A stretch of DNA of 64,000 nucleotides from Vitrella brassicaformis CCMP3155 (GCA_001179505.1 CDMY01000322.1:57887-121886); one strand, 5' to 3'. Positions 28,755 through 56,338 are shown, numbered from the stretch's first letter. The notes: a model not told the origin generated them from the letters alone. Numbers and translations: made by a program.

Positions 28755-30671
28755 CTAGCGAGACAAATACATAGGACAATACACACATGCGAGCATAAGC
28801 GTGGGCACGTGCGCCCGCGCCTGCCGACTATCGTAATGCACTGACTTGCTACTCTCCCCGCTCCTCCCCACCGCCCGTCGACAGACAGCTCTCACACACA
28901 GCCATTCGGCGAGCATGATCTCCGCCACCGCAGTCAGCCACTGCCAGCCATCCGGCACCTGCACACACACAGACAGATACAGCACCGCATGATCACCATG
29001 GTCGGGACAACCATGTACCTTGACTCTCTCCCTTCTGTGCTGACCTGCAGTGTGTAGATCTCCAAACCGACACATGTAAAGTAGTGGCTGGCAGCTAAGG
29101 TGGCCCATCCCTCCTCGTTGATGCTGCCCACGTACGTCTTGTCGTCGGGCAGCTCATCCCTCTCTACCCACTGGAGGCAGCTGCGCAGGTCGCCAGCCGG
29201 GCCTTGCTGCGGTCGCCCCCCATGCCCCAGCCACAGGCGGCCGCCAGCAATGCACACCATGCCAGCCGCGCCCCTGCTACCCACCACCGCCCCCTCTGTC
29301 CCAGCGACCTCCACATACTGTCTGTCGTGCGGCACATTGATCTTGGTGATGCCGCCCTCCTCGAATGCGCCACTGATGGAGTAGAAGGTCACGGGGCAGA
29401 ATGTCGTCTCCACTGCAGTGGGGTCGGCGGGCTGCTTGAGCTGTCCCTCGATGTGGGCGGCGAAGGTGTGGCTGCCGGTGTCCTTGGCCACCAGCAGCAG
29501 GTCGGCCGCCTCGCCCACCTTGGCCACCATGGTCTCGTGGGCCCAGCCGTCACGCTCGCCCCTGACACAGCCGGACAGACAGGAGAGGGATACGATGATA
29601 GCATCACAGCCGGCGGCTCATCTTTGGGTGACCCACTTGTAGAGCAGCTGTGCGGTCATGCCTATGTGGCGGGTCGTGTCGATGAGGGCCTGGAGGTCAT
29701 CGACGGGGAGGATGGGATCAGCCGGGAGGGTCGTCCACACCTGAACAGACAGACACACACACACACGTCACATCGACATGATGACGTCCGTCCACTCGAT
29801 GTGTCTGTCTGACCTGGTACACCTCCAGTCGCTGGGCGGTGAAGGAGTGGTTGTCGGCCAAGGTAGGATTTCCTCGCTCGTTGAAGGTGCCCACGTACGT
29901 CTTGTCGTCGGGCAGCTCACCCCTCCCCACCCACTGACAGCAGCTGCGAACGTCGTCAGTCGACCGCCCATCCTCCCCACACCCCAGCCAGAGCCGGCCG
30001 AGAGCGATGCACACCTTGCCCACGGGCAGACCCTCGTGGTCCTTCACCGCCCCCTCTGTGCCGGCGACCTCCACCGACTGCTCGTCATGTGGCACGGTGA
30101 TCTCGGCGATGCCGCCCTCCTCAAATGGCCCACTGATGGAGTAGAAGGTCACGGGGCAGCCGGTGGTCAGCGTCGATGTTGGGTCAGCCGGAGGGATGAG
30201 GGGCCCGTCGATGTGGCAGGCGACGGTGTGCTGCTTGTCGTCCTCGATGACGAACAGCAGGCCGCTCACACCCGCCACTCGCTCTACCAGAGTGCCAAAC
30301 TCTCCGCCGTCAGACGAACTCCTGACACACAAAGGCACCCAAATCAACACATGGCATCTCCCTCTTGTCCCCCCTAATGTGTGTTGTGACTCACTTGAAG
30401 AGGCATTTGATGTGGCTGTGCGATTTGCCGATCATCGAGAGGTACACCCGCTCCATGAGGCCGTACATGTCACAGGCATACAGCAGCTCGGCAGGCCAAG
30501 TGCTCGTCGGCAGCGGCGTGGCGGCGTCGGGGGCCAACCGAATGCGACGGACGTGATCCACCACCCTGCACACCACACACACAGCATGGAGATTTCGTGT
30601 GCCGCCTGGCTGCTGCTGTGGTGGGCTACTTGTGGAAGGTGTCTGCCGACACATCCCCGATGGGCCCAAAG

Positions 30672-30706
<35 letters not shown>

Positions 30707-31384
30707 GCCAAGATGACCACCACGCCATCTCATCTCCGCCTGTAGACCTACTTGATGAATCGGTCGTGCAGTATGCTGTAGTCGGCCAGCGTCGCGTCGG
30801 TCGTGGCCACCACACCGCCATCCGCCACACGCACACTCAGCACCTCACTGCCGCCCGTCCCGCCCGCCACCGATGAGCTGATGAACGGCCCCATGACGGC
30901 CATGAAGCCCCGGAACGCCTCGCTGTCGTGGTCACCGTGTTGCGGCTCGATGGTGACGGCCGTCTCGGCGAAGAAGCGGTCGTGGTAGAAGGCCAGTGCG
31001 GGGCAGCCCTCGATGATCTCACTCACGTCGATGCGGTTGCAGCTCAGGTGCCGAAGCTTCACAGCCAACCTGAACACACACACGGCGACTGCTGCTGCCT
31101 GTCAGCCATCGTGTTGCTTCCCTCCCTCCCCCTCACCAGATGAAGTAGAAGGGGTCTGCGTCAATGAAGTGAATGCGATTGTCGTCTGTGATCATCCAGC
31201 TGTCGAAGCGGTTCAGCAGCACCGCCAGGCAGGTGTCCCGCAGCCCCTCGCACAGCAGCACATCCCGAGGGAAGGCCATGACGAAGCCGCCCACGTTGAG
31301 CAGCATCGGCCGGCCGCTCATCTTCTCTGCTGGCCTGTGGATGCCGTCTGCTGTGGCCGTGCTGCTGCATGCCGACGCCTTCAT
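28755..31384 (-). CDS. BTB-BTB-TLDc-TLDc family, copy A
   Basis: KCTD-type BTB (LLNVGGFVMAFPRDVL...FIDADPFYF). Second BTB-like (TTDATL...RF...FHKVVDHVRR...LLYACDMYGL). TLDc-like 1 (CLFKSSSDG, LFVIED, TFYSISG, FTAQRLEVY). TLDc-like 2 (LLYK|GERDG...FTCVGLEIY). Confidence 0.85.
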
Positions 31385-33334
31385 GGATGATGCGGTGCTC
31401 CTATGGCGAGAGAGGGATGGCGGCAACCCAGGCGGCAACAGACGGAATGAGTGACGATTCGGACGCTCCGAATCGATAGATATCGACAGAGATGGCCTTC
31501 CGCGTCGCCCTGCTGCTCTTGTGAAGCCTCAGGACGGTTGGAAGCTCGCTACAGCCACCAAGGATCCATTTCCTGCGAGCTCAAGTGGCAAAAGAAGGCC
31601 TTCTTCGTAATTCCAGACGTCCAGCGTCGCTGCCCCATCCCTGCTGGCCATATTCGGTCACCAATTCATTCATTGACTCATCCACATTCATTCATTCATT
31701 GAGATGAATGATCATCCACATGTACACGCCATCCGGCCAGAAGAGTGGCAGAGCGCGAGAAAGCCCCCCGTCCCGCTTTCAGCTGACTCAGATTCCCCGC
31801 CCAGTCAGCCCAGGGATGAAAGACACAGAGCTCGATGATATAAAATGCAGGCAGCGATACATACCACCCTCGGCCGTGCCATCAAACGCTATCCAATCTG
31901 CGTCACGTGCATCATCGATGGCGTGGATCTCATGAAGTGACTGAGTCGCCTCGGACCATCCTGCCTTGCTCATGAGCCCCCTCTGGTCCCCTGTGTGCCA
32001 CAAAAGGCAAACAGACAGACAGACAGACAGACACACAGACACACAGACACACAGACATTGCATCCCCCTCCTCACGGACGCTGACACTCGTCTGTCTTCC
32101 TTCCAGTATCCACATGGAGGAAGATGCACAATGCCTTGACAGTGTTAGGTAGGTCCGTAGTCGGGCACAGTGAGTTCGTAGCTTCAATCGTGTAGGGTGG
32201 GCAAAAGAATGGTGGGCGTGGGGATAATGTTGTGGCATGGCTCGGATAGAGGCGAGGGACGGCGGCACACATGAGTGTGTCGCATCCCTCCTTTCCGTCG
32301 CGTGGCCTCTCGCTGACCAGGGTGAGCTCGGGAAATAAGGATGCAATGTCCTCGAGAAGGTCGGGATGAGTGTGGCTTCTTCTCCCATGGCGATGAGTCG
32401 ATAATGGCCTGTTTGATCCACTCCCGCACAATCCCGTCGGGCAGCTCGATGTCGTCGTCCTCTATTGAGAGGCACGCCAGCGACTGCGGGTGAGGGACTG
32501 GAAGGTTGATCTTCAAACGGGGCTCTCTCCCACCCAATCCATTGCAGGCAAAGTAACTTCCTCACCCTCCAAGCTGATGGCAAGGGATGCCACTGGAAGA
32601 GTGTGAAAGGGTCAGATGCCCCCAGACTTGGTTGGGCCGGCATGTCTGTGGGCTCTTTGATGATGGGATGGTGGCGCACTTCGCAGCAATTCGTCTCGTA
32701 GGTCGCAAACTTCAACGCCGTCTTCTTTTGTCCGGCGAGACACGAAGGCCGACGATGGCTGGCAGAGGTCTTGATGCTGCGCTTGTTCTGCCTGATGTGT
32801 TCTCTCCGCCTCCACGTCCTCAAAGAGGCTGGCTGCAGGATGGATGAGGGGGTATGGAATCGACCTGACAAATGGGCGGCCTTTTTGACAGCTCGACGCC
32901 GTCTCCGCTTGTCGAGCGAAATGTGGATGCCGATGAGGATGGCTTGTGAATGCTTTGATGCCGTCCGTGACTGAGGCGTCCACCTCTGAACATACGAATC
33001 ACACAAATCATACACGCGTAAGAGAGGATTTGTTACCTGCGCAGGATGGTGGCACAGGTGCTCGGACAGAGGCGCTGGGAACGTCGATGGCTGACGGGAG
33101 CCGTCCCCGCCTCTCGAGGAAGAAGCCAGACAATTGAGAAGCAGAGACCGTCATGATTTCCTAAATTCGTTATCACGTGAAACGGACTTTTTCTCATGAT
33201 AAAACAGACTTCTTGCAGCGTCAGGCAAGCCTTGAGCCCTTACAGGCCCGAATGATCCGAATGCGATGCATTTGCAGTGAAGTGCTTGTGCGAAACTCAC
33301 AAACGACCCAGCCATGACGCAAGCACAAAACACT

Positions 33335-33906
33335 TCGCGTCACACGATTATGTGTTTGTTTGTCAGTCAACAATCAATGATCATCGATGGATCATTGTCA
33401 TTCATTCATTCATTCATTCAGTGAATCACTGCATCACTACAGACAACCCTCCTCGGTTGCTTCGCTTGGGAGACGGCCGTGATNNNNNNNNNNNNNNNNN
33501 NNNNNNNNNNNNNNNNNNNNNNNNNNNNNNNNNNNNNNNNNNNNNNNNNNNNNNNNNNNNNNNNNNNNNNNNNNNNNNNNNNNNNNNNNNNNNNNNNNNN
33601 NNNNNNNNNNNNNNNNNNNNNNNNNNNNNNNNNNNNNNNNNNNNNNNNNNNNNNNNNNNNNNNNNNNNNNNNNNNNNNNNNNNNNNNNNNNNNNNNNNNN
33701 NNNNNNNNNNNNNNNNNNNNNNNNNNNNNNNNNNNNNNNNNNNNNNNNNNNNNNNNNNNNNNNNNNNNNNNNNNNNNNNNNNNTCCGAGGAGGGTTGTCT
33801 GTAGTGATGCAGTGATTCACTGAATGAATGAATGAATGAATGACAATGATCCATCGATGATCATTGATTGTTGACTGACAAACAAACACATAATCGTGTG
33901 ACGCGA
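33335..33906. repeat. Perfect ~120-bp inverted repeat flanking the gap, nested inside the TIR element
   Basis: 33335-~33455 is the reverse complement of ~33785-33906. Confidence 0.9.
33484..33783. other. Assembly gap (300 N)
   Basis: Run of N. Confidence 1.
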
Positions 33907-34269
33907 GAGAATGACAGAGTGATTCGTTCGTTCATGTCTCATCCAGCGGCCCGTCCCATTGCAGAATCACTGTCATTACACTGATGTATGAGACCTCTAA
34001 AGAGGAGCAGAGCGATCACAAGAGCGCACTCTGAAGTCTGTTTTATCATGAGAAAAAGTCCGTTTCAGGTGATAACGAATTCCTAAACACGTCCCGGGAC
34101 ATGCCAATCTGGCCTGTTGAGGTTGTTCGTTGAGCCTCCCGTCGGTGGCATTCTGCTGTTCGCTCCCGCCTGCCCACTGTGGCACACCCCCCAGCAGCCC
34201 GAGGATGACAGGGATGACAAACACTGAGCCATCTTTCCCCGACCAAGTTGCGGCAGCCCGAACAGGAAT

Positions 34270-34520
34270 ATCGCAATAAAAGGTTTGCGCGAAAGATGTC
34301 ACCGTGCGCAATCCCGAGCTCATGCGGGAAAGCCAGCATGAGGACGGACTGGTAGAGGACGGCTTTGATGTCGGCGTCAAGCAGCACTGTGCTGGTCATC
34401 CACTTGTCCGCCGACTGGTACCCATCGAGCAGCTCCAGCTGTAGCCACTGGTCGCCCCGCCCACGTGCTGCTGTGGTCGAGGCGATGTGGTCGGGGACGT
34501 CGACAAGGTCCGTTGCGCAA
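34270..34520 (-). pseudogene. Degenerate protein-kinase fragment (subdomains V-VIb)
   Basis: DQWLQLELLDGY...DIKAVLYQSVLMLAFPHELGIAHGDIFRANLLL resembles xLxxEy...Qil.al.ylH..gi.HrDlkxxNil. No DFG or APE found in frame. Confidence 0.45.
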
Positions 34521-34760
34521 ACACTCCATCTTTCCCCGAACGAGATGCGGCGGACCGAACGGAGGAATGCCCAGACCCAAAAGAATTCCGAACCAGCTTG
34601 GCGAGAAAGCGAAACCGAGCCAGCATTTAAACAATTTCGCTGGGGTCGTTGCGATGCATTCAAAGAAGCGCAAAGGCGGCGCTGGTCCCCTCTCTGCCGC
34701 CGCTGACGAGTCACCCCTCGAGACATTCCCCTCTTCGGCTGGCCATCGCTCGACAAGAAT

Positions 34761-36697
34761 GTGTCCAGTGCACTCGAAGCGCTCAGCGCCATCGAAGCGG
34801 CCATTCAACAGGCCCGCCAGCAGCTGCAGGGGGAGGTCAGTTCGACGCGTCAGCTCATCGAGAGCAACGGCGGCCGGCTGCCGAAGAAGGTGAGCGGGGA
34901 GGTGGAGATCAACGTGGGAGGGACGGTGTTCACCATCGCAAGGAAGAATTTGGTGCTTGAGGGTGTTAATGAGACGAACTTCGCCCGTTTGCTGCTGTAC
35001 CATCTCGAATGGCTGCCTGAGGACGATGAGGGACGGCCCTTTCTCGATGCATACGCCCCATACTTCACATGGTACAATGCACACACGAGGATCGGATGGC
35101 GAGGGAAAAATCAGCTCGGCTGCATCCGGCTGTGTTGTGCCAGGTTGGTTGATCAGCTGGACGTTGTCGCCTCAGCCAACTCGCAGGGCGTGCGCCGTGA
35201 CGCATCCGACATCGAGCTCGACCCTCCCCACGACACAGATCCCTCTTTCGTGTGCTACCACGAGCTGTTCTTCACCACCCAAGACGAGTATGAGATGGAG
35301 GTGGACGACGATTTCAACTTCGATGAGGACGACGAGGAGGAGGGCGAGGGCAAGAAGGCGCTGAAGGGGGTGCGGGGCAATGTCGGCACATTCCGCGAGG
35401 CTCTGCGGGGCCTCAAGGCTTCAGAGAAGGGCATCCAGCGCTTCTACGAGAAGATGGCGCCATTCTTCAAGTATGGAGATCCCAAGCAGACAACTGTCTG
35501 ACAACACGAGTACAAGCCTGTCAGGTCGATTCGTTTTCCTGTGGCCATCAGGTCTGATGGTGAGGAGGGTCGTGGCGATGGGGATGATGTCATGAGTGTG
35601 ACGGTGATGCCGCGGGGCGAGACCGTCGCCACCACACAGGCCACCCTATCGCAGCTGGGGCAAAACCACCTCCTGCATAAGAGATTCTCTACGTAAGCAG
35701 GCCGAGGGAAGGAAGATGGGGAGCACAGGTGCGCATCCATTGAGTTTGTGTTGTGTTTCCAGGCGTGCTGATGGATGGGGCACACTGCCGGTCAAGCAGA
35801 CGAGCAGCGAGCACTTCCAGAAGATCCTCGACTTCGCCCGCAGACGGCGGCTCGCTCCACGCGGCACCGTCATCGAGGCCCCCGCCACCGTGGCCCGCAA
35901 CCGAGGCCCGCTCGATCGCGACCTGCAGATGTATTCGATGCCCGTGGATGACGCCTACAAGTCGTTCCTGGGCAAGGACGAGATGCGCAAGCTGCTCGCC
36001 TTCACCGAGAAACACAAGCCCATCAAGAAACTACTCTACTCGTAAGCCCCGCCATACACAATGCACGAGGCAGCTTGCATTGGATTCCTTATCATGCATG
36101 TGCCAGGTCTGTCCGTGATGGCTCGGACGCGGACGCGATGCGCGACAGGATTGACGGTAAGGAGGGCCTCCTCGTGGCCATCCAGGGCAAGAAGAATGGC
36201 GAGACGCAGCGCCAGCAGTTCGGCGCCTTCATCAACGGCCGCATTCATGAGAGCATTGCGGAGATGAAGGAGGCCAACACGCTGCCGTCTTTCTTCTCCT
36301 TGGATGGGGAGACGGGCGAGCCGGTGAAGATGGACATCATAGAGAAGCTGGGGGAGGCCGCATCCGAGAACAGCGAGGGCGGGGAGCCGGCGGCCGTCAC
36401 CCATGGGGTGGTGATGATGGAGTTCTTCCCGTCTCGTCTGACGATGACACATGCCATTCTCCCTGACGGCAGTGTCACAGGCGGCGGCTTCTTCGCAGAG
36501 CAGCAGCTGAACGCCACAGCGGCGGCGATCACGACCGTCCCTCGATTTGATCCAGCCAGCGCAACCAATTCCATCTTCGCGGAGCCGTGTGTTGAGATAT
36601 GGCAGGTGAGTCCAGCGGGTGGCATGGGAGCGAAACGAGGAGTAACTCACATGGTTGTGTCTTCTGTGTCGGCCAGGTTGGGAGCAGACAGGACTGA
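34761..36697 (+). CDS. BTB-BTB-TLDc protein (diverged, single-TLDc relative)
   Basis: VEINVGGTVFTIARKNL...PFLDAYAPYFTW (BTB). VATTQATL...FQKILDFARRR...DLQMYSM (BTB-like). KLLYS|SVRDG, LLVAIQ...FGAFING, SFFSL, FAEPCVEIWQ (TLDc). Confidence 0.85.
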
Positions 36698-36931
36698 TAC
36701 CACTTCAAAAACAACATCGGCCGCGCCAAGGTCAGGAGAAAGCGATGGAATGGAATGGATGAGTGGGTGGGTGTTCACTCTCGTTTCTTTGGTTGGCTGC
36801 AGCTGCCGGCCCTGACTGATCGCAGTTGAGACACAAGCAGACTTGGCTTTTCCCCAGCCCACAGACCGACCCATCAGACCGATGCGCTCTTGCATGATGG
36901 ACTGCATGCATGTCATATGCATATGAAATGG

Positions 36932-37255: not shown

Positions 37256-37546
37256 GTGGGTGTTGTGTATCCATTGGTTCTCCATCCCATCGATGATCGT
37301 CAAGCGTTGTGTCTCTTCCATGCATGTACAGTGCTTGTGGCCCATTCCCGCGATTGACCGGCGTGTATTGTCACGTTGACGGCAGAGCGCTTCCTGTGCG
37401 CCCTTCCGTCAACGTGACACCTCCGCTCATCAATGGCAGGAATGGCCCACCGACAAATGGCAAATCATCTCTCACTTCTCTCTTTCGCACTTCATTCACA
37501 CACCACAATCGATTAACACACACACAGATGCACAGCCGCGTTTTGG

Positions 37547-42188: not shown

Positions 42189-44621
42189 ATGAGCGGCCGG
42201 CCGGCCGATGCTGCTCAATGCCGGCGGCTTCGTCATGGCGTTCCCTCGGGATGTGCTGCTGTGCGAGGGGCTGCGGGACACCTGCCTGGCGGTGCTGCTG
42301 AACCGCTTCGACAGCTGGATGATCACAGACGACAATCGCATTCACTTCATTGACGCAGACCCCTTCTACTTCATCTGGTGAGGGGGAGGGAGGGAAGCAA
42401 CACGATGGCTGACAGGCAGCAGCACTCCCCGTGTGTGTGTTCAGGTTGGCTGTGAAGCTTCGTTACCTGAGCTGCAGCCGCATCGACGTGAGTGAGATCA
42501 TCGAGGGCTGCCCCGCACTGGCCTTCTACCACGACCGATTCTTCGCCAAGACGGCCGTCACCATCGAGCCGCAACACGGTGACCACGACAGCGAGGCGTT
42601 CCGGGGCTTCATGGCCGTCATGGGGCCGTTCATCAGCTCATCGGTGGCGGGCGGGACGGGCGGCAGTGAGGTGCTGAGTGTGCCTGTGGCGGATGGCGGT
42701 GTGGTGGCCACGACCGACGCGACGCTGGCCGACTACAGCATACTGCACGACCGATTCATCAAGTAGGTCTACAGGCGGAGATGAGATGGCGTGGTGGTCA
42801 TCTTGGGCACCGTGTGTGTGTGTGTGTGTGTGTGTGTGCAGGTATGGGCCCGTCGCGGATGTGTCGGCAGACACCTTCCACAAGTAACACACCACAGCAG
42901 CAGCCAGGCGACACACGAAATCTCCATGTGTGTGTGGTGTGTGCAGGGTGGTGGATTACGTTCGTCGCATTTGGTTGGCCCCCGACGCCGCCACGCCGCT
43001 GCCGACGAGCAGTTGGCCTGACGAGCTGCTGTATGCCTGTGACATGTACGGCCTCATGGAGCCGGTGTACCTCTCGATGATCGGCAAATCCCACAGCCAC
43101 ATCAAATGCCTCTTCAAGTGAATCACAACACACATTAGGGGGGACGCAGGAGGGAGATGCCATGTGTTGATTTGGGTGCCTTTGTGTGTCAGGAGTTCGT
43201 CTGACGGCGGAGAGTTTGGCACTCTGGTAGAGCGAGTGGCGGGTGTGAGCGGCCTGCTGTTTGTCATCGAGGACGAGAAGCAGCACACCATCGCCTGCCA
43301 CATCGACGGGCCCCTCAGCCCCCCGGCTGACCCCACATCAGCACTGCTCACCGGCTGCCCCATGACCTTCTACTCCATCAATGGGCCATTTGAGGAGGGC
43401 GGCATCGCCAAGATCACCGTGCCGCCTGGCGACCAGCGGGTGATGGTCGCCGGCACAGAGGGGGCGGTGATTGGCACCAAGGGCGGGGCTGGCAAGGTGT
43501 CCATCGGTGGGGGCCGCCTGTGGCTGGGGTATGGGAAAGGTAGTCCGGGTGGCGACCTGCGCAGCTGCAGTCATTGGGTGGAGAGGGATGAGCTGCCCGA
43601 CGACAAGACGTACGTGGGCACCTTCGACGAGGAGGGACGGGCCACCCTGGCTGCCAGCCACTACTTCACAGCCCAGCGACTGGAGGTCTACCAGGTCAGA
43701 CCGACACATCAAGTGGACGAACGTCATCATGTCGATGTGACGTCTGTGTCCATGTGCGTCTGTGTGTGTGTGTGTCTGTTCAGGTGTGCAGCACTCTCCC
43801 GGCCGACCACTTCCTCCCCGCCTATGACCTGCAGGCCCTCATCGACACGACCCGCCACATAGGCATGACCGCACAGCTGCTCTACAAGTGGGTCAGCCAA
43901 AGATGGGCCGCCGGCAGTGACGTGATCATCGTATCTCTCTCCTGTCTGTCCGGCTGTGTCAGGGGCGAGCGTGACGGCTGGGCCCACACAACCATGGCGG
44001 CCAAGGTGGGCGAGGCGGCCGACCTGCTGATGCTCTTCAAAGACACCGGCAGCCACACCTTCGCCAGCCACATCGAGGGACAGCTCAAGCAGCCGGCCGA
44101 CCCCACTCGAGTGGAGACGACACTCTGCCCCGTGACCCTCTACTCCATCAGTGGCGCCTTCGAGGAGGGCGGCATCACCAAGAGCACCGTGCCACAAAAC
44201 AAGCAGGGTGTAATAGTAGCCGGCACAGAAGGGGCGGTGAAGGACAGCAAGGGTTGGGCTGGCAAGGTAGCCATCGGTGGCGGTCGCCTGTGGCTGTGGT
44301 TGGGGATTGGGGAGGATGGGCGGCCGGCTGGCGACCTCCGCCGCTGCCATCAGTTGGTGGAGAGGGATGAGCTGCCCGACGACAAGACGTACGTGGGCAG
44401 CATCAAAGAGGACAGATGGGCCACCTTAGCTGCCAGCCTCTTCTTCACGTGTGTCGATTTGGAGATCTACACACTGCAGGTCAGAGGGGCGGAGGGCGGC
44501 ACATGAGTGTTTCCCCTGTGGTGATTGTGCTGGGCTGTCTCTGTCTCTCTGTGTTCAGGTGCCGGATGGCTGGCAGTGGCTGAGTGCGGTGGCCGACATC
44601 GTGCTCTCACAATCGACATGA
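42189..44621 (+). CDS. BTB-BTB-TLDc-TLDc family, copy B; a 4-bp duplication frameshifts the N-terminus (intact from ATG 42208)
   Basis: Same exon structure as copy A. ATGAGCGGCCGGCCGGCCGATG here versus ATGAGCGGCCGGCCGATG in copies A and C. Ends VPDGWQWLSAVADIVLSQST*. Confidence 0.85.
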
Positions 44622-46951: not shown

Positions 46952-48686
46952 ATGGTGTCACTTGCTGCTGTGGTATTGACGGCTGTCGCCTACTTCGGCG
47001 TGCAGGTTCATCATGCGACCAGACAACGGCTCCTCAGCGGCCTGGCACATCGTCCTGCTCCGTCATCGGGGAATGGACACAACTTCACAGCAAGGGGCTT
47101 GCTGCGCGGTGGACGGATTATGCTGCAAGACAATGGTGGTGCGTCGGAATCGGAGATTCCTGGTGGAAACACCAGCGCTTTTGAGATGGCCTACACGGAT
47201 TTCTATAACAGACCCATCCCTTCCGCACTCGTCGACAAGTGGTGGCTCTATGCAGAATCACACAATTGCTCAACGGAGCCCAGCCACTATGCCAACGTGG
47301 ACCATCAGCTGGAGTCTTTTCGCAGCCAGCAGACCTACACAAGGCCCGGCATCACCAATGAGATGGTTGAGAGCGCGGCAAACGCACAGAGGACTGTTCT
47401 CTGGCAGGTATGATATATGGACTCGGGAAGAAAAAACTACCAAAGACAAACGATCGTTTTGTGTCAGGTGAAGAAAGGCGAGTTATCTCATGTGCGAGGG
47501 GACGTCTACTTCTGGGGGAGCGGCCCCTGGCGAAACGAGCTTCTTGGGCCGATTGCAGCACTGTTGCCGGACATGCTGATAGCGACGAATCTCCTAGATG
47601 AGCCACGCGCCCTGCGGCCGGCGAATGAGAGCATCGAGCGGCCTGGTCGAGTGGCCTTTGTGGGCGGGAGCGCTGCTGAGGCCATCAGGCCATCCTGCCC
47701 CAACGAAACGGCTTTATATGAATCAACCGTTGGCTTCTTCGTCAGCCCTGCCACGTTCGATGCCCGCCGCGGTCTGCTACCCATCCTCTCTCGCACGCGC
47801 GTGTCGCCATGCTTTGTGGACATTGTGAGTTCGTTCTATCCTGGCGAGTGGGCTCCTAGAAGTGAGCCCTTGACCAGATGGGAAGACAAAGTGGGCAAGT
47901 TGGTTTGGCGTGGGTCCAACACGGGATGCCAGTGGACCAATGCAAACGATTTGCTGTGGAAGTGTGAGAGGGGGAGACTGGTGAAGCTGTTCGGCCAGAA
48001 CAACAAGAATGCAACTCTGAAGGATGTTGGCGACGAGATGCGGGCGCACGGCCTACTGTCGGATCAGGACAAGTGGCCGTCGGGCAAGTGGGCGTCATCG
48101 CGTGTGGGAGACCTCTTCGATGTGGCCATGACGGGCTACGGGCAGTGCAGCACGCCATCCATTTGCTCACAGCTGGAGAGCGTTCTGGGGACAGCCAAGC
48201 CGATGCCGGTTGAGGGCTATTTCGATTACAAGTATGTCCTGCATGTCGATGGCAACTCGTACTCGCGCAGACTGGTCAGCCTACTGCGCTCGAACTCCCT
48301 TGTCTTCATCTCGGTGAGCAACCACGAAAGAGGGCCTTACACTCTCTGACTTTTCTCTCCGTCAGACGGCTTTTGAGACGTGGATGGACGGGTGGCTGCA
48401 GCCGTGGGTGCACTTCGTTTCTGTCTCTCCCTCACTCACGGACCTGCCTTCAAAGCTGCTGTGGGCACTGGAGCACGACGACGAGGCGCGGCAGATAGCC
48501 CAGACCGCCCAGGGGTTCGCTGCGTCCCATCTGCGGCCCGTGGATTTCTCCTGCTATCTGGCGTGGCTGCTGATCGAGTATGAGAGCCTTTTTAGACCGA
48601 GACAGCGGCCGAGAGACCCTGGGCCTTCCATGTCACAAGGCGGCATTCTAAGGCATCTGAAGATATCAAGGCCGAGCAGAGTTTGA
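46952..48686 (+). CDS. Glycosyltransferase family 90 (CAP10/KDELC-like), type II membrane protein
   Basis: N-terminal TM (VSLAAVVLTAVAYFGVQV), KLVWRGSNTG, YKYVLHVDGNSYSRRLVSLLRSNSLVF, WLQPWVHFV, DL..KLLWA.EHDDEARQIA..AQ.FA. Confidence 0.9.
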
Positions 48687-48807
48687 TGATGATTTCGTCT
48701 TGGAATGACCCTTTCCTGATGAAGCAGGGCAAGACCGAGACTTGCAAGAAATCGGCTTGTGATGTCAGTTGAGACGGTTGGCTTCGGCATGAATGGATGT
48801 GTGTGAT

Positions 48808-49273
48808 CTCCCTGGCACATCGATCGTGTGGCAGCCTTCTGTCACGTAATGGATGTATGCTTCATGCAAGCGATGGAGTGTCGAAACATGACTACACAGG
48901 CAGGCGAGCATGCAGCACACCCGTGACCCCACGGCCACACACATGAACCAAACAAGAAGGTGATGAATGAAAAAGGCAGATATACACACATCAACGCCTA
49001 CGCAGCATTTGTATACAGACAGCGTCACATCGAAGACAATACATCCGAAGCGGAAGGAACGGGCCATCGATGCACTCGCTCCTCCGCCTGCCGACTATCC
49101 TAATGCACTCACTGGCTACTCTCTCCGCTCCCCTCCGCCCCTCCACAGACAGCTCTCATGTCGATTGTGAGAGCACTATGTCGGCCACCGCACTCAGCCA
49201 CTGCCAGCCATCCGGCACCTGAACACACACAGATACAACCAGGAGGGCAACGGAATCCAAACACTCATCTGCA
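48808..49273. repeat. Segment X, copy 1 (appears identical to 53593-54058)
   Basis: 466-bp match by eye, ending exactly at the gap. Confidence 0.92.
49156..49273 (-). CDS. BTB-BTB-TLDc-TLDc family, copy E: last exon only, rest presumably in the gap
   Basis: VPDGWQWLSAVADIVLSQST* plus part of the last intron, identical to copy C. Confidence 0.7.
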
Positions 49274-49573
49274 NNNNNNNNNNNNNNNNNNNNNNNNNNN
49301 NNNNNNNNNNNNNNNNNNNNNNNNNNNNNNNNNNNNNNNNNNNNNNNNNNNNNNNNNNNNNNNNNNNNNNNNNNNNNNNNNNNNNNNNNNNNNNNNNNNN
49401 NNNNNNNNNNNNNNNNNNNNNNNNNNNNNNNNNNNNNNNNNNNNNNNNNNNNNNNNNNNNNNNNNNNNNNNNNNNNNNNNNNNNNNNNNNNNNNNNNNNN
49501 NNNNNNNNNNNNNNNNNNNNNNNNNNNNNNNNNNNNNNNNNNNNNNNNNNNNNNNNNNNNNNNNNNNNNNNNN
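49274..49573. other. Assembly gap (300 N), probably much larger in reality
   Basis: Its two flanks match positions about 9.6 kb apart elsewhere in the window. Confidence 1.
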
Positions 49574-49929
49574 TGCAGCTATCGAGTGGCCTCGTCTGTC
49601 GGGGGCATTGAGCTCTCTCTGCGTGCCGAGAACCTCCGCCTTACTGCTAGCAGCTGATCAGCCAAATGGCTACACTTTTTCAGCTCTGAGCGACTGACTG
49701 ACTGGCTGGTTTTTTTCTGCGTTGTTCTGGGCGGCTTTCAGTGTCGAGGGCGTCTGTGTGTGTGACACACTTACCCAGGGGGCTGACCTGTGTGTGTGTG
49801 TATCATGTGAGTGAGACGCAGGTATGATGGCGACCAATCGTGCCCTCCCCTGGTACTTGGCTGTCTCTCTGCGTGCTCTCGGTACCTATCCCTTCCTCGC
49901 GTCGTGCGTATGCGCGTGTGTCGAGGACG
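49574..49929. repeat. Segment Y, copy 1 (appears identical to 63645-64000)
   Basis: 356-bp match up to the window end; offset 14,071 bp. Confidence 0.92.
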
Positions 49930-50272
49930 TGTTGGCCCATCGCACAGACGAGCGGGGGACTGCACCCATGCGTATCAACAATAAACGAGCAATGTACAGA
50001 GCAGCGCGACATAAGACGTTTGTTGGGTCAGAGTCCGACCATCGAACTACCTGACTCAGTCAGTATAGGCCATCCATTCCATCACTCTCATCCCCCATGC
50101 AGCCAGCACCCTGACTCAAAAACCAGTCCAGCCCCTGTCTGCACAGCTACTGGCCTTGCGACTGACTGACTGACTGACTGTCCGCCCACCCGCCACTAAT
50201 GTGAGTGATACGATAGTCACTCACTCACTCACTCACTGTCTGTCTGTCTGTCTGTCTGTATCTTGCCTTTTT

Positions 50273-51371
50273 CTATCTCGCGGGCAGCAGACGCCTCCTA
50301 CTTCTGTCGTCAGGCTGACTCGGCTGCTTCCTACACCTGACTGGCAGTTCCGCGTGCATGTGTGTGTCGCTGGGTGATGGCTCCTCGTCATCAGTGGGTC
50401 CGTCATGGGCAGCAGGACCTTCAGCTGAGGGAGAGGGGTGCGACAGGAGGGACCTGAAGGTGTCACTCAAATACCTGGACGCACACACGCAGGCAGGCAG
50501 CCGCACACGGTGGGCGACTGACTGACTGAGGCAGGCAGCGAACACCCACCGGCCGGATCCACTGAACACCCACCGGCCGGATCCACTCAGGCACACTGAC
50601 CGTTTCAGTCTGTTGTGTGGTCGTCGTGCAGCAGCTGCAGCGGCGGCCTGCGCATCCCTCTCAAAGAGCTCGATGGCCGCGCAGTTGTCGTACACACAGG
50701 TCAGGTCGTCCAATGCATCTTTCTGCGCGTCGCTGAGAGCTGCGGCAGACAGGCATACCCGGCCGGGCAGTCAGTGTTGTGTGTGAGGTGAATGCTGCTG
50801 CGTGGCTGCCTCCTCCGCTCACTCACTGGCATATTCTGATTCACACACGCAGACAGGCGGGGAGGCAGGCAGGGAGGCAGGCAGGCAGGGACAGGTGATC
50901 ACACGAGGCATGCAGCCAGCCATTCACTGGGGTGGATACCTGGGAATTCCCTGAACTGCTTCAGCACGGCCTCCTTCTCTTCCTCCTGACAGCACACAGA
51001 CATACACACACACACACACACACATATACAGACACATCCATCCATCCATCCATCCATCCATCCATTGTTCGGATGCCCTCGATGGTCTGGTCTGCTGTAG
51101 GTTGGTTGCTCACCGTCATCGAACGCCATATGGGCATGGTGGCTGCAGTCCGTCCAAAGAGGAGAGAGTCCGTCACACATGCATACAGTCAGTCACCCTC
51201 ACTCTCCTGCGTGTGGCTGGCTGCGTGCGCACCGTTGACGGTATCACATAGCTTCCTGCCCTCTTCGTCCACCGGCCTGAGCTTCAGCACTCGTTCGCAC
51301 AGCTGGTCCGGTCCCAACTGCGGCTGCGGTGGCGGACGGAACATCTGAGTCAACATCTCTTCAATCCGCAT
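50273..51371 (-). CDS. Possible small multi-exon hypothetical protein
   Basis: Coding-like blocks MRIEEMLTQMFRPPPQPQLGPDQLCERVLKL, EEEKEAVLKQFREFP and LSDAQKDALDDLTCVYDNCAAIELFERDAQ, with (GT)n-CAG acceptors. Exon joins not established. Confidence 0.35.
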
Positions 51372-51488
51372 TCCCACGATGAGTGTGTGGCCTTCCTGTG
51401 AGCCTCTCTGCAGCTGATCTTTGCATTTCCTTCCTTTCACCTCTAAGCTCGCATTTGCCGATCGTTGCAGTGAGGCTTTTTCCCATTT

Positions 51489-51767
51489 CAGGTGGGTGGA
51501 GAGGCGGCCGAGCGACACCGCGACACCCCCAGACGGGCCGAGCGACTTCAGGCCCTTTCTCACTTGATGGGTTTGGCGGCTCGGAAGTCGCTAAAGGCGC
51601 GTGCCACCGTCCACAAGACGCCCGAAGCGACAGCAGAGGCCTTCAAGTGGGACAGGGTGGCAGAGACGGCACGAGTTGCAAGGCTGCGGTATGGCGGCGC
51701 CCGGAGCACCGCCTGTGAGGAGTACATCGCGCAACTGACGGGCCAACAGATCGGGTGGGTGAGCTGA
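51489..51767 (+). pseudogene. Orphan, diverged copy of the C-terminal exon of the RING gene at 62342-63374
   Basis: ATVHKTPEATAEAFKWDR...QQIGWVS* versus ATVHKTPEAIAEAFKWDR...QQIGWVG*. The 3' flanks are also similar. No RING exons seen upstream. Confidence 0.65.
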
Positions 51768-52262
51768 CTCATCAACACGACCTGTTTGTGTGGGTGCGTG
51801 TGTGTCAGACCTGACGTGTCGTTGGATGTGCAGAGTGACGTGTGCGTGTGTGGTATGGTGAATCGACCAGAGCACAACAAGAGCGACGTCACGCGATCTG
51901 AAGGGGGATGCTTGGCCGCGGATGAGGGGGGAAATGAGACTCTGCGGCAGTCGAGACGATCGGATTCGGCATGAACGGATGTGTGTGTGACCTTATGTGA
52001 GGATGCGTCACGCAATGCATTCTTCAAGGATGAGTGTCGGAACATGTCTACACGGGCAGGAAGGCGAGCATGCAGCACACGCCTGGCACCACGGCCACAT
52101 ACATATGAGCACAAAGAGACGGGTATACACATCTTCAGGCACACGCACACAGCAGCTGTATACAAACACATAAGACGGTATACACACATGCGCATAAGCA
52201 TGGGCATGTGGTCCTGCGCCTGCCGACTATCCTACACTCGCCCCGCTCCCCTCCGCCCCTCT

Positions 52263-53292
52263 TCACGTCGATTGTGAGAGCACGATGTCGGCCACCGCAC
52301 TCAGCCACTGCCAGCCATCCGGCTCCTGAACACACACAGACAGAACCAGGAGGGCAACGAAATCAAAACACTCATCTGCACCCCTCCGCCCCCTGGCCCC
52401 TCTGTGCTGACCTGCGGTGTGTAGATCTCCAAACCGACACATGTGAACACATGATCGGCAGCCAGGGTGGCCCATCCGTCCTCGTTCACCTTGCCCACGT
52501 ACGTCTTGTCGTCGGGCAGCTCATCCCTCCACAGCCACTGACAGCAGCTGCGCAGGTCGCCAGCCGGCCGCCCCTCCTTCCCATAGCCCAGCCACACGCG
52601 GCCACCAGCGATGCACAGCTTGCCAGCCCAGCCCTTGTCACCCACCACCGCCCCCTCTGCGCCGGCGACCAACACCCACTGGTCCTCATGCGGCACGGTG
52701 ATCTTGGCGATGCCCTGCTCCTCGAATGGACCACTGATGGAGTAGAAGGTCACGGGGCACCGTGCTGCCTCCACTCCAGTGGGGTCTGCCGGCTGCTTGA
52801 GCTATCCCTCGATGTGGGTGGCGATGGTGTGGCTACCGGTGTCCTTGGCCACCAGCAGCAGGTCGGCCGCCTCGCCCACCTTGGCAACCATGGTCTCGTG
52901 AGCCCAGCCGTCACGCTCACCCCTGACACAGCCGGACGGACAGACAGGAGAGAGATACGATGATAGCATCACAGCCATCTTTGGCTGACCCACTTGTAGA
53001 GCAGCTGGGCGGTCATTCCTATGTCGCGGGTGGTGTCGATGAGGGCCTGCAGGTCATCGGCGGGGAGGATGGGGTCGGCCGGGAGAGTGCTCCACACCTA
53101 AACAGACACACACACACACATCGACATGATGACGTCCGTCCACTTGGTGTGTCGGCCTGACCTGGTAGACCTTCAGTCGCTGGGCTGTGAAGTAGTGGCT
53201 GGCAGCCAGGGTAGCCTGCCGTCCACCACCGGTCGATCCGGTCCTGGTGGCAGATCCCTCCTGGTCGATGCTGCCCACGTATGTCTTGTCGT
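52263..53292 (-). CDS. BTB-BTB-TLDc-TLDc family, copy D (3' part; 5' part lost in the gap)
   Basis: End of TLDc1 (with an insertion ...SATRTGSTGGGRQ...), linker, full TLDc2 and last exon ...VLSQST*. Confidence 0.8.
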
Positions 53293-53592
53293 NNNNNNNN
53301 NNNNNNNNNNNNNNNNNNNNNNNNNNNNNNNNNNNNNNNNNNNNNNNNNNNNNNNNNNNNNNNNNNNNNNNNNNNNNNNNNNNNNNNNNNNNNNNNNNNN
53401 NNNNNNNNNNNNNNNNNNNNNNNNNNNNNNNNNNNNNNNNNNNNNNNNNNNNNNNNNNNNNNNNNNNNNNNNNNNNNNNNNNNNNNNNNNNNNNNNNNNN
53501 NNNNNNNNNNNNNNNNNNNNNNNNNNNNNNNNNNNNNNNNNNNNNNNNNNNNNNNNNNNNNNNNNNNNNNNNNNNNNNNNNNNNNNNNNNNN
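53293..53592. other. Assembly gap (300 N)
   Basis: Run of N; too short to hold the missing 5' half of copy D. Confidence 1.
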
Positions 53593-54058
53593 CTCCCTGG
53601 CACATCGATCGTGTGGCAGCCTTCTGTCACGTAATGGATGTATGCTTCATGCAAGCGATGGAGTGTCGAAACATGACTACACAGGCAGGCGAGCATGCAG
53701 CACACCCGTGACCCCACGGCCACACACATGAACCAAACAAGAAGGTGATGAATGAAAAAGGCAGATATACACACATCAACGCCTACGCAGCATTTGTATA
53801 CAGACAGCGTCACATCGAAGACAATACATCCGAAGCGGAAGGAACGGGCCATCGATGCACTCGCTCCTCCGCCTGCCGACTATCCTAATGCACTCACTGG
53901 CTACTCTCTCCGCTCCCCTCCGCCCCTCCACAGACAGCTCTCATGTCGATTGTGAGAGCACTATGTCGGCCACCGCACTCAGCCACTGCCAGCCATCCGG
54001 CACCTGAACACACACAGATACAACCAGGAGGGCAACGGAATCCAAACACTCATCTGCA
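53593..54058. repeat. Segment X, copy 2
   Basis: Matches 48808-49273. Confidence 0.92.
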
Positions 54059-55690
54059 CCCCTCCGCCCCCTGGCCCTTTCTGACCTGCAGTGTGTAGAT
54101 CTCCAAATCGACACATGTGAAGAGGTGGCTGGCAGCTAAGGTGGCCCGCCGTCCATCACCGATGAAGGTCCCCACGTATGTCTTGTCGTCGGGCAGCTCA
54201 TCCCTCTCTACCCACTGGAGGCAGCGGCGGAGGTCGCCAGCCGGCCCACCCTTGCCAATCCCCAGCCACAGGCGCCCGCAACCAATGGCCACCTTGCCGC
54301 CCCCGCCCTTGTTGCCCACCACCGCCCCGTCTACGCCGGCGACCTCCACCCACTGCTCGTGCGGCACGGTGATCTTGGTGATGCCCGGCTCCTCAAATGG
54401 ACCACTGATGGAGTAGAAGGTCATGGGGCAGCGTGTTCTCTCCACTGCAGTGGGGTCGGCTGGCTACTTGAGCTGTCCCTCGATGTGGCAGGCGAAGGTG
54501 TTGCTGCCGGTGTCCTTGGCCACCAGCAGCATGTCGGCCGCCTCGCCCACCTTGGCCACCATGGTCTCGTGGGCCCAGCCGTCACGCTCGCCCCTGACAC
54601 AGCCGGACAGACAGGAGAGAGATACGATGATAGCATCACAGCCGGCGGCTCGTCATCTTTGGGTGACCCACTTGTAGAGCAGCTGTGCGGCCATGCCTAT
54701 GTCGCGGGTGGTGTCGATGAGGGCCTGCAGGTCATCGGCGGGGAGGATGGGGTCGGCCGGGAGAGTGCTCCACACCTAAACAGACACACACACACACACG
54801 TGGACATGATGACGTCCGTCCACTCGATGTGTCGGCCTGACCTGGTAGACTTCCAGTCGCTGGGCGGTGAAGGAGTGACTGTCGGCCAAAGTGGCCCGTC
54901 CGTCCTCGTCGATGCTGCCCACGTACGTCTTGTCGTCGGGCAGCTCATCCTTTTTTACCAACTGTCGGCAGCTGCGGAGGTCGCGCCGCCCATCCTCCCC
55001 ATAGCCCAGCCACAGGCGGCCCCCACCGATGACCACCTTGCCAGCCCCGCCCTTGTCGCCCACAACCGCCCCCTCTGTGCCGGCGACCGTTACCCGCTGT
55101 CTGTCGTGCGGCAGGGTGATCTTGGCGATACCCTGCTGCTCGAATGGCCCACTGATGGAGTAGAAGGTCACGGGGCTGCCGGTGAGCAGCGTCGATGTGG
55201 GGTCAGCCGGGGGGATGAGGGGGCCGTCGGTGTGGCAGGCGATGGTGTGCTGCTTCTCGTCCTCGATGACGAACAGCAGGCCGCTCACACACCCGCCACT
55301 CGCTCTACCAGAGTGCCAAACTCTCCACCGTCAGACGAACTCCTGACACACAAAGGCATCCAAATCAACACATGGCATCTCCCTCCCACGCCCCTCTGTT
55401 GTGTGTTGTGATTCACTTGAAGAGGCATTTGATGTGGCTGTGCGATTTGCCGATCATCGAGAGGTACACCGGCTCCATGAGGCCGTACATGTCACAGGCA
55501 TACAGCAGCTCGTCAGGCCAACTGCTCGTCGGCAGCGGCGTGGCGGCGTCGGGGGCCAACCAAATGCGACGAACGTAATCCACCACCCTGCACACACCAC
55601 ACACATGGAGATTTCGTGTGCCGCCTGGCTGCTGTGGTGTGTAACTTGTGGAAGGTGTCTGCCGACACATCCGCGACGGGCCCATACCTG

Positions 55691-55722
<32 letters not shown>

Positions 55723-56338
55723 GTCCCCAAGATGACCACCAGGCCATCTCATCTCCGCCTGTAGACCTACTTGATGAATCGGTCGTGCAGTATGCTGTAG
55801 TCGGCCAGTGTCGCGTCGGTCGTGGCCACCACACCGCCATCCGCCACACGCACACTCAGCACCTCACTGCCGCCCGTCCCGCCCGCCACCGATGAGCTGA
55901 TGAAGGGCCCCATGACGGCCATGAAGCCACGGAACGCCTCGCTGTCGTGGTCACCGTGTTGCGGCTCGATGGTGACGGCCGTCTTGGCGAAGAATCGGTC
56001 GTGGTAGAAGGCCAGTGCGGGGCAGCCCTCGATGATCCCACTCACGTCGATGCGGCTGCAGCTCAGGTGCCGAAGCTTCACAGCCAACCTGAACACACAC
56101 GGCGAGTGCTGCTGCCTGTCAGCCATCGTGTTGCTTCCCTCCCTCCCCCTCACCAGATGAAGTAGAAGGGGTCGGCGTCAATGAAGTGAATGCGATTGTC
56201 GTCTGTGATCATCCAGCTGTCGAAGCGGTTCAGCAGCACCGCCAGGCAGGTGTCCCGCAGCCCCTCGCACAGCAGCACATCCCGAGGGAACGCCATGACG
56301 AAACCGCCGGCATTGAGCAGCATCGGCCGGCCGCTCAT
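53941..56338 (-). CDS. BTB-BTB-TLDc-TLDc family, copy C (apparently intact)
   Basis: MSGRPMLLNAGGFVMAFPRD... through both TLDc-like domains to VLSQST*. Intron positions are the same as in copies A and B. Confidence 0.87.

What the first reader, a model, noticed from the sequence alone, without database searches (positions are those of the whole stretch)
28755..56338. BTB-BTB-TLDc-TLDc cluster with a constant scaffold and hypervariable TLDc domains: candidate diversified receptor/adaptor system
Seen: at least five copies (A 28755-31384, B 42189-44621, E 49156-, D 52263-, C 53941-56338). A 106-aa exon in the BTB half differs at only 3-4 residues between A, B and C. The ~60-aa TLDc1 core (ITVP...WV) differs at close to half its positions between A and B by hand alignment, including indels. 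The intron right after TLDc1 differs at only ~3 of its first ~46 nt. Variation is concentrated in patches between fixed anchors (VAGTEGAV, GRLWLG, ELPDDKTYVG). Established: KCTD-type BTBs oligomerise and can recruit Cullin-3; TLDc domains bind V-ATPase. Inference: a constant/variable adaptor family under diversifying selection, possibly for intracellular non-self recognition and ubiquitination.
Basis: partly seen in the sequence, partly recalled or inferred. Interest (0 to 1): 0.85.

Follow-up and report, generated by a model that had tools for sequence, protein, structure and literature searches.

The report
Fast-diverging BTB-TLDc gene family in Vitrella
The alga Vitrella brassicaformis has a family of about 30 genes, seen in no other organism, in which copying between genes keeps the front half nearly identical while a few exposed positions in the two rear (TLDc) domains change faster than chance; what they bind and whether they are expressed is unknown.

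Summary
The pattern is real, but the copy count and the mechanism need correcting. The window is the last 64 kb of Vitrella brassicaformis scaffold CDMY01000322.1.

**Copies in the window**
- A and B are intact. B is the public protein CEM02285.1.
- C has a 2-bp insertion and an in-frame TAG.
- D is a 3' fragment with a TAG that runs into a gap.
- "E" is a 100% duplicate of C's tail next to a gap, not a copy.
- Four more copies lie upstream on the same scaffold. About 30 paralogs exist, all in Vitrella.

**Domains**
- Both TLDc folds are confirmed.
- The first BTB is KCTD/T1-like, on weak but consistent evidence.
- The second "BTB" is not confirmed.

**Why the front is constant**
The front half is constant because of gene conversion: its introns are also 90-95% identical, and dS is about 0.05.

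**Why the rear is variable**
- The C-terminal halves of both TLDc domains are islands of old divergence. Their dS of 0.3-0.4 matches the flanks and intron 6.
- Their overall dN/dS is 0.55-0.69.
- My own codon models find about 10% of sites with omega of 3-5. This holds block by block and far exceeds eight null simulations.

**Open points**
Function and expression are untested. First readers noted the same family on other DNA (s1-218447, s1-201659).

The parts
28755..31306 (-). Copy A, intact open reading frame. Exons: 31137-31306, 30752-31069, 30630-30671 (mini-exon 2b), 30395-30565, 29814-30321 (TLDc1), 29637-29740, 29045-29561 (TLDc2), and 28958 downward. The consensus stop is lost, so the frame runs on to 28755.
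   Evidence: All introns are GT-AG and there are no stops. No matching public model was among the 30 hits.
42208..44621 (+). Copy B, intact; equals public protein P0092 / CEM02285.1 (619 aa). Exons: 42208-42377, 42445-42762, 42842-42883, 42947-43117, 43193-43694 (TLDc1), 43784-43887, 43963-44479 (TLDc2), 44559-44621.
   Evidence: The AF2 model of P0092 has two TLDc domains at pLDDT 80-93.
53941..56323 (-). Copy C, full length but disrupted: a 2-bp insertion in a GT run at 55287-55292 (exon 4) and an in-frame TAG at 54464-54466 (exon 6).
   Evidence: The public annotation splits it into 470-aa and 133-aa models.
52263..53292 (-). Copy D, a 3' fragment: the end of exon 4 with a 36-nt in-frame insertion (53219-53254), then exon 5, exon 6 with TAG at 52802-52804, and exon 7. 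Its 5' part is lost in gap 53293-53592.
   Evidence: It is annotated as a 244-aa model.
48808..49273 (-). 'Copy E': a 466-nt stretch 100% identical to 53593-54058 (C's exon 7 and 3' flank) that abuts gap 49274-49573. This is assembly redundancy, not an independent copy.
30395..31306 (-). Constant 5' half of A (T1/KCTD-like BTB, a linker helix, and an unassigned second region). Exons are 95-97% identical and introns 90-95% identical among 7 copies on 3 scaffolds.
   Evidence: dS is about 0.05. PHI test p = 0.005.
29814..30095 (-). Variable C-terminal half of TLDc1 in A. The matching region in B is 43419-43694.
   Evidence: Mean dS is 0.41 and dN 0.22. It is an island flanked by neutral divergence of 0.14-0.15 in all 21 pairs.
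29045..29335 (-). Variable C-terminal half of TLDc2 in A. The matching region in B is 44189-44479.
   Evidence: Mean dS is 0.31 and dN 0.20. The variable columns are the same as in TLDc1: 29 are shared.
53293..53592 (.). Assembly gap between D's exon 4 and C's 3' flank. The sequences on its two sides belong to different genes.

Best explanation
This is part of a Vitrella-specific gene family that evolves by repeated gene gain and loss (birth and death). Each unit is about 3 kb: the gene plus roughly 230 nt of 5' and 250 nt of 3' flank.

**Extent.** At least 8 copies sit on this scaffold in both orientations, and about 30 exist in the genome.

**Protein.** Each encodes a T1/KCTD-type BTB domain, a helical and unassigned middle region, two TLDc domains and a short conserved C-terminal helix.

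**Shown**
1. Ectopic gene conversion keeps the 5' 1.2 kb, introns included, at 95-97% identity.
2. The C-terminal halves of both TLDc domains are not homogenised. Their synonymous divergence equals that of the flanks and intron 6.
3. Within those halves about 30 homologous positions vary between fixed anchors. About 6-10 of them show omega of 3-5. These include alternate positions of the QxVxV strand, the residue after LWLG, and the x of RSCxQWV.
4. About half of the close subfamily is pseudogenised.

**Inferred.** The BTB domain makes oligomers that display two TLDc heads per subunit. The variable strand faces and loops of those heads form a diversified binding surface. In mEAK-7 the same half of the TLDc domain holds most of the V-ATPase contacts. 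The proteins could therefore be variable adaptors, possibly linked to Cullin-3 or V-ATPase. Selection, or heteroduplex rejection, keeps conversion out of the variable halves.
For: **Organism and family**
- Scaffold identity and the extent of the family.

**Structure**
- TLDc fold: Foldseek probability 1.0; VIA Z 15-17.6 at rmsd 2.3-2.8 A over 154-164 residues; Pfam TLD at 52 bits on paralog P0001.
- BTB1: sub-threshold BTB_2 hits in 7 of 8 N-termini; the top profile hits in the PDB are KCTD17, KCTD9, KCTD5 and SHKBP1; AF2 pLDDT is 73-92, and nearly all top Foldseek hits are KCTD/T1.

**Gradient of neutral divergence**
-.

**Mosaic ancestry and recombination**
- B and I are close in the 5' flank (d = 0.10) but far in intron 6 (0.34). 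I and K97 show the reverse (0.75 versus 0.08).
- PHI test p <= 0.001.

**Positive selection**
-, with the N-half as internal control and null simulations.
- Cross-validated omega is 1.0-1.7.

**Pseudogenes**
-.

**mEAK-7 contacts**
- Contact residues are listed in PMC9263379. Only coarse positional anchors link them to this family.
Against: - Domain-wide dN/dS is below 1.
- The cross-validated omega intervals mostly include 1, so relaxed constraint explains most of the variable positions.
- The codon-model tests are my own implementation. Branch lengths were fixed up to a scale factor, only 18 sequences were used (several from pseudogenes), and recombination is demonstrably present. Only 8 null replicates were run, and one reached an LRT of 8.4.
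- There is no evidence of transcription. Clusters of ten family members contain no transcript-derived proteins, and two metagenome/transcript scans were empty.
- The second 'BTB' failed every test.
Confidence: 0.6

Rival explanations
1. Neutral mosaic. The family is simply old. Gene conversion homogenises the 5' half. The TLDc C-halves, made of loosely constrained loops, diverged enough to block heteroduplex formation and so escaped conversion. Pseudogene decay adds amino-acid change. No adaptive diversification or receptor-like role is needed.
For: - dS in the C-halves (0.31-0.41) equals flank and intron 6 divergence (0.36-0.5), and it is high even at invariant-amino-acid codons.
- Domain-wide dN/dS is 0.55-0.69.
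- The cross-validated omega confidence intervals span 1.
- 5-6 of 10 close copies are broken.
- No expression evidence was found.
Against: - M8 beats M8a (omega fixed at 1) by 25.7, and M2a beats M1a by 51. The signal persists with block-specific trees and is absent from the N-half control.
- Null simulations with extreme recombination gave at most 4.7.
- Omega is higher, not lower, when only intact copies are used: 1.25 and 1.72.
- The same columns vary in TLDc1 and TLDc2.
Confidence: 0.3
2. Assembly artefact. The apparent cluster and its near-identical 5' halves come from collapsed or duplicated contigs in a gapped short-read assembly.
For: - Two 100% identical stretches end exactly at gaps: 48808-49273 equals 53593-54058, and 49574-49929 equals 63645-64000.
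- A perfect 122-nt inverted repeat surrounds gap 33484-33783.
Against: - A, B, C and the copies on other scaffolds differ from each other at 3-5% even in the 5' half and at about 15% in the TLDc exons.
- Each sits in its own unique flanking genes.
- Only E, and the placement of D, are affected.
Confidence: 0.04
3. The 3-kb unit, or the TLDc cassette itself, is spread or diversified by a mobile-element-linked or locally mutagenic process rather than by selection on the host protein.
For: - The duplicated unit has similar ends in all copies and is dispersed in both orientations on at least 3 scaffolds.
- Other Vitrella proteins fuse this TLDc type to CENPB/Tc5-type HTH domains.
- A Tc5-like HTH gene lies near copy K97.
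- dS itself peaks in the variable halves.
Against: - No terminal inverted repeats were found at the unit ends.
- The introns are retained, so this is not retroposition.
- No transposase lies inside the unit.
- The anchors between the variable patches are not hypermutated.
Confidence: 0.06

Closest known systems
TLDc-domain proteins (OXR1, NCOA7, TBC1D24, mEAK-7/TLDC1; yeast Oxr1p, Rtc5p)
   Same: The fold is the same. TLDc2 of B aligns to NCOA7, mEAK-7, Oxr2, Skywalker, Oxr1p and Rtc5p TLDc domains at Z 13.5-17.6. The N-terminal 'S-x-DG' motif and the C-terminal 'LEVY/VEVW' strand align by sequence.
   Different: - There are two TLDc domains in tandem behind a T1-type BTB.
- Sequence identity to known TLDc domains is only 14-20%.
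- The middle of the domain is about 29 residues longer than in mEAK-7.
- The subtype is known only from Vitrella: all 20 sampled hits of 86.
- Known TLDc proteins are single-copy, conserved V-ATPase partners, not diversified families.
KCTD / Kv T1-type BTB proteins
   Same: The N-terminal domain (LNVGG...FIDADP.YF) gives KCTD17, KCTD9, KCTD5, SHKBP1 and Kv4.3 T1 as best sequence-profile and fold matches.
   Different: All scores are below curated thresholds (12-18 bits against 21.4; Foldseek E 0.025-0.3). The C-terminal partner domains are TLDc. Oligomeric state and Cullin-3 binding are untested.
Insect BTB-BACK-TLDc proteins (Bombyx Bmmp, Drosophila CG7102)
   Same: BTB and TLDc occur in one polypeptide (bioRxiv 10.1101/2021.07.26.453796).
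   Different: The insect proteins are single-copy developmental genes with a classical BTB plus BACK and one TLDc. Here the BTB is T1/KCTD-like, no BACK domain was found, and there are two TLDc domains in about 30 paralogs.
MATH-BTB and F-box adaptor families of nematodes and plants (birth-and-death evolution; defence role hypothesised)
   Same: These are lineage-specific, clustered, unstable families with a conserved ligase-docking module and a rapidly evolving partner domain. PMC1866355 summarises them as unstable and as hypothesised, on indirect evidence, to act in pathogen defence.
   Different: The variable module here is TLDc, not MATH or FBA. The constant part is kept by gene conversion that includes introns. 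No link to Cullin-3 has been shown.

Membership tests
TLDc domain (Pfam PF07534) | Match to the family HMM above the gathering score | tested here: met
   Paralog P0001 scores 52.2 bits against a cutoff of 24.5. PF07534 is precomputed for B's protein P0092. Single exons of A and B alone score 20.5-21.9 bits, just below the cutoff.
TLDc domain (Pfam PF07534) | TLDc fold | tested here: met
   AF2 pLDDT is 80-93. Foldseek probability is 1.0 to 4acj, 6r82, 8ar6 and 7obp. VIA Z is 15-17.6 at rmsd 2.3-2.8 A.
TLDc domain (Pfam PF07534) | Binding to V-ATPase | not testable with these tools
   Only a coarse positional overlap was found between the variable half and the mEAK-7 contact residues.
T1/KCTD-type BTB (Pfam PF02214) | Match to the family HMM above the gathering score | tested here: not met
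   7 of 8 N-termini hit BTB_2 at 12-17.7 bits against a cutoff of 21.4. There was no hit on the window's exon pieces.
T1/KCTD-type BTB (Pfam PF02214) | BTB/T1 fold in the first domain | tested here: met
   AF2 pLDDT is 73-92 for residues 8-100. Nearly all of the top 50 Foldseek hits are KCTD/T1/BTB, with probability up to 0.98, but E is 0.025-0.3 and TM to target is 0.5-0.6. The PDB profile search puts KCTD17 first at E 0.016. The evidence is weak but concordant.
T1/KCTD-type BTB (Pfam PF02214) | A second BTB domain (residues about 159-256 of P0090) | tested here: not met
   There was no PDB profile hit at E <= 10. hhalign to BTB1 gave probability 0.2%. No BTB hit appeared in 15 members. AF2 pLDDT is 30-55 and 52-78. 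The only hint is Skp1 at Z 3.4, which is within noise.
T1/KCTD-type BTB (Pfam PF02214) | Oligomerisation and Cullin-3 recruitment | not testable with these tools
   No test was possible.
Adaptively evolving BTB adaptor families (MATH-BTB type) | Lineage-specific expansion with clustering and pseudogenes | tested here: met
   About 30 paralogs exist, all in Vitrella. At least 8 are on one scaffold. C, D, I, J94, K97 and H are disrupted.
Adaptively evolving BTB adaptor families (MATH-BTB type) | Positive selection confined to the partner domain | tested here: met
   LRTs are 51 and 59 for the whole C-halves and 29, 26 and 8.6 by block. The N-half control gives 5.5, and null simulations give 0-8.4. 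Caveats: my own implementation, and recombination is present.
Insect BTB-BACK-TLDc (Bmmp/CG7102) | BACK domain between BTB and TLDc | tested here: not met
   No BACK hit appeared in any Pfam scan.

The most novel reading that the evidence does not exclude
The TLDc domain, known elsewhere only as a conserved V-ATPase partner, has been turned in Vitrella into a variable recognition module. A BTB oligomer would display two TLDc heads per subunit. Exposed strand faces and loops of those heads are kept diverse across about 30 genes by positive selection and by exclusion of gene conversion. Together they would form a cytosolic repertoire that marks variable targets (viral, symbiont or transposon proteins), for example for Cullin-3 ubiquitination.
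Probability: 0.15. Interest if true: 0.8.

Novelty: new variant of a known kind. Interest (0 to 1): 0.5.

Why it matters
TLDc is a widespread domain whose only well-established activity is binding V-ATPase. A lineage-specific family in which half of the TLDc fold is the fast-evolving part would point to which face of the domain does the binding. It would also be a new case of the conserved-dock, variable-head design seen in MATH-BTB and F-box families.

The locus is also a clean example of mosaic concerted evolution. Gene conversion homogenises exons and introns on both sides of two islands that keep old divergence. It fits a wider, undescribed expansion of TLDc domains in Vitrella: 86 clusters at 50% identity, in several domain contexts.

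Tried and rejected
- **Pfam on single exon translations.** Gave only sub-threshold TLD hits and no BTB. I needed full-length paralogs from the representative search.
- **Spliced proteins of A and C.** These could not be passed to the database tools because they have no reference. A was analysed only in scripts.
- **Second BTB.** Tested by PDB profile, hhalign against BTB1, Pfam on 15 members and AF2. All were negative or low-confidence.
- **Expression.** An exact search for the exon 5-exon 6 splice junction, and a family-profile scan of metagenome and transcript contigs, found nothing. The 90% clusters of ten members contain only the genome-derived protein.
- **Terminal repeats at the ends of the 3-kb unit.** None convincing.
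- **The 'conserved intron means selection on the exon' argument.** Rejected after adding four more copies. Introns 4 and 5 average 84-85% identity, like exons 4 and 6.
- **Literature.** No paper holds both 'TLDc' and 'Vitrella'. The papers holding 'Vitrella' and 'BTB' are unrelated.
Full report
**Source and layout**

The window is eukaryotic: about 60% G+C, GT-AG introns, and GT microsatellites at intron ends. Locus L005 overlaps window positions 1-5627 at 100% identity. This places the window at 57,887-121,886 of Vitrella brassicaformis CCMP3155 scaffold CDMY01000322.1.

Self-comparison finds three gene-length copies about 88.5% identical: A (- strand), B (+ strand) and C (- strand). It also finds a partial copy D (- strand) next to C.

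**Gaps, tested first**

- The 466 nt at 48808-49273 are 100% identical to 53593-54058, and they stop exactly at gap 49274-49573.
- The 356 nt after that gap are 100% identical to the last 356 nt of the scaffold.
- 'Copy E' (49156-49273) is therefore only C's last exon and part of intron 6 seen twice. It is not a fifth copy, and the contig holding D may be misplaced.
- D is cut within exon 4 by gap 53293-53592. The far side of that gap is C's 3' flank, so frame continuity is undefined.
- Gap 33484-33783 lies outside all copies.

**Gene model**

Aligning A, B and C gives an eight-exon model with GT-AG at every intron.
- The start is the MLLN(V/A)GGF methionine. B has a 4-bp insertion just upstream of it, so the upstream ATG cannot be the start.
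- Paralog P0001 shows a 42-nt mini-exon (YGPVADVSADTFHK) inside what I first called intron 2.
- A and B are open throughout. B is protein P0092 / CEM02285.1.
- C has a 2-bp insertion in a GT run and an in-frame TAG. D has a TAG two codons away from C's TAG position. The public annotation splits C and truncates D accordingly.

**Family**

A search with A's TLDc1 exon against 1.84 billion representative proteins found only 86 clusters. All 20 that I sampled, from the best to the weakest, are Vitrella proteins.

A word-index search with P0001 gave 30 proteins. All were Vitrella, except one unnamed JGI/IMG sequence whose 90% cluster holds a Vitrella protein. UniProt names them 'TLDc domain-containing' or 'Potassium channel tetramerisation-type BTB domain-containing'.

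Four more copies lie on the same scaffold upstream of the window:
- F, a composite with extra TLDc units.
- G, which is P0090.
- H, a fragment fused to a lactate-permease gene model.
- I, which is split into two gene models.

Close relatives J94 and K97 are on two other scaffolds. Under the consensus exon model A, B, G and the second part of F are open, while C, D, H, I, J94 and K97 are disrupted.

The duplicated unit is the gene plus about 230 nt upstream and 250 nt downstream. I found no terminal repeats.

**Domains**

- The AF2 model of B's protein gives two TLDc domains at pLDDT 80-93.
- These match NCOA7, mEAK-7, Oxr2, Skywalker, Oxr1p and Rtc5p TLDc domains with Foldseek probability 1.0 and VIA Z 13.5-17.6.
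- The first domain is T1/KCTD-like on three weak but concordant lines.
- The proposed second BTB failed every test. Its best structural hint is Skp1 at Z 3.4, which is noise level. Its motif order looks BTB-like to me, but that is inference only.
- BTB combined with TLDc is already known in insects as BTB-BACK-TLDc.

**Constant versus variable**

Mean identity among the seven full-length copies:

| Segment | Identity |
|---|---|
| Exons 1-3 | 95-97% |
| Introns 1-3 | 90-95% |
| Exon 4 | 84.6% |
| Intron 4 | 84.4% |
| Exon 5 | 89.6% |
| Intron 5 | 84.7% |
| Exon 6 | 84.2% |
| Intron 6 | 71.9% |

- The 5' half is constant in its introns too, which protein-level selection cannot explain.
- Synonymous divergence is about 0.05 in the BTB half, 0.13-0.20 in the N-terminal parts of both TLDc domains, and 0.31-0.41 in their C-terminal parts.
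- It is just as high at codons whose amino acid never changes. It equals the divergence of intron 6 (0.36) and of the 5' flank (about 0.5).
- In all 21 pairs the TLDc1 C-half is an island flanked by lower neutral divergence on both sides.
- Ancestry is mosaic. B and I are close in the 5' flank but not in intron 6. I and K97, and C and I, show the reverse.
- The PHI test rejects no recombination (p <= 0.001 for the whole gene and for exon 4).

The 'constant scaffold' is therefore a product of gene conversion. The variable halves are the parts that escape it and retain the family's true age.

**Selection**

- Domain-wide dN/dS in the C-halves is 0.55-0.69.
- To avoid circularity I defined variable columns in one TLDc set and measured omega in the other. 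This gave 0.98 and 1.36 for all copies, and 1.25 and 1.72 for intact copies. Bootstrap intervals mostly include 1.
- My own codon-likelihood code gave M1a versus M2a 2dlnL = 51.4, M7 versus M8 = 59.0 and M8a versus M8 = 25.7. It used F3x4 codon frequencies and M0 branch lengths fixed up to a scale factor. About 9.5% of sites had omega of about 3.8.
- With a separate tree for each of three blocks the LRTs were 29, 26 and 8.6. The N-half control gave 5.5, not significant.
- Eight simulations under the fitted M1a gave 0-8.4. Five of them shuffled tip labels per block to mimic extreme recombination.
- The recurrent sites are both x positions of QxVxV, the residue after LWLG, the x of RSCxQWV, and two sites flanking ATLAAS.
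- In the AF2 secondary structure these alternate with invariant hydrophobic or cysteine residues in strands. This suggests that they face outward (inference).

**Function**

Nothing here tests function.
- In mEAK-7 six of the eight listed V-ATPase contact residues lie in the part of the TLDc domain that corresponds by position to the Vitrella variable half (PMC9263379). Only coarse sequence anchors support that correspondence.
- The nearest conceptual parallel is the MATH-BTB and F-box adaptor families. Their unstable evolution has been ascribed, on indirect evidence, to pathogen defence (PMC1866355).
- I found no transcript evidence, and no paper on TLDc in Vitrella.

**Earlier notes of this scan**

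First readers flagged the same family on the adjacent part of this scaffold (s1-218447) and elsewhere (s1-201659). A followed-up note describes a separate secretory TLDc expansion (s1-205488).

**Verdict**

This is a real, lineage-specific family with mosaic concerted evolution and a modest, localised signal of positive selection. The receptor/adaptor reading is possible but unproven.

Noticed in passing
window 34368-36697 (+): An annotated 569-aa gene lies between copies A and B. Its N-terminus is homologous to the family's BTB1 (hhalign probability 97.6%, E 3.7e-12). Its C-terminus is only weakly TLDc-like (probability 26%). It is probably a distant single-TLDc relative.
   Followed up: partly
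window 48808-49273 / 53593-54058 and 49574-49929 / 63645-64000: Two 100% identical pairs each end exactly at an N gap or at the scaffold end. The contig 49574-53292, which holds copy D, may be misplaced in the scaffold.
   Followed up: partly
window 33335-33456 and 33785-33906: A perfect 122-nt inverted repeat surrounds gap 33484-33783. It is either a foldback or transposon end (another first-reader note, s1-227085, calls a transposon here) or an assembly artefact.
   Followed up: no
window 57243-59185 and 59599-61545: An inverted duplicate (77.6% identity over about 1.9 kb) of an orphan gene with no Pfam match in the piece I tested.
   Followed up: no
window 44559-44621 (B exon 7); 28755-28958 (A): A separate last exon encodes a conserved C-terminal helix, WQWLSAVADIVL, after TLDc2 in many paralogs. 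A has lost the consensus stop and reads on 47 more codons. mEAK-7 also uses a C-terminal helix after its TLDc domain to grip V-ATPase; this is a resemblance only.
   Followed up: no
L002:8760-13560 (copy F); L001:5750-7120 (copy H): F is a composite with an internal partial duplication, giving extra TLDc units (public model P0088, 778 aa). H is a TLDc fragment that the public annotation fuses to a lactate-permease gene (P0002, 999 aa).
   Followed up: partly
Vitrella proteome (P0013, P0018, P0024, P0043, P0048, P0059, P0078): The same TLDc subtype occurs with ZZ fingers, as three or four tandem TLDc domains, and fused to CENPB/Tc5-type HTH domains. All 20 sampled hits of 86 are Vitrella proteins.
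   Followed up: partly
window 54464-54466 (C) and 52802-52804 (D): The neighbouring copies C and D each carry a CAG-to-TAG stop two codons apart in the same GQLKQ motif of TLDc2.
   Followed up: no
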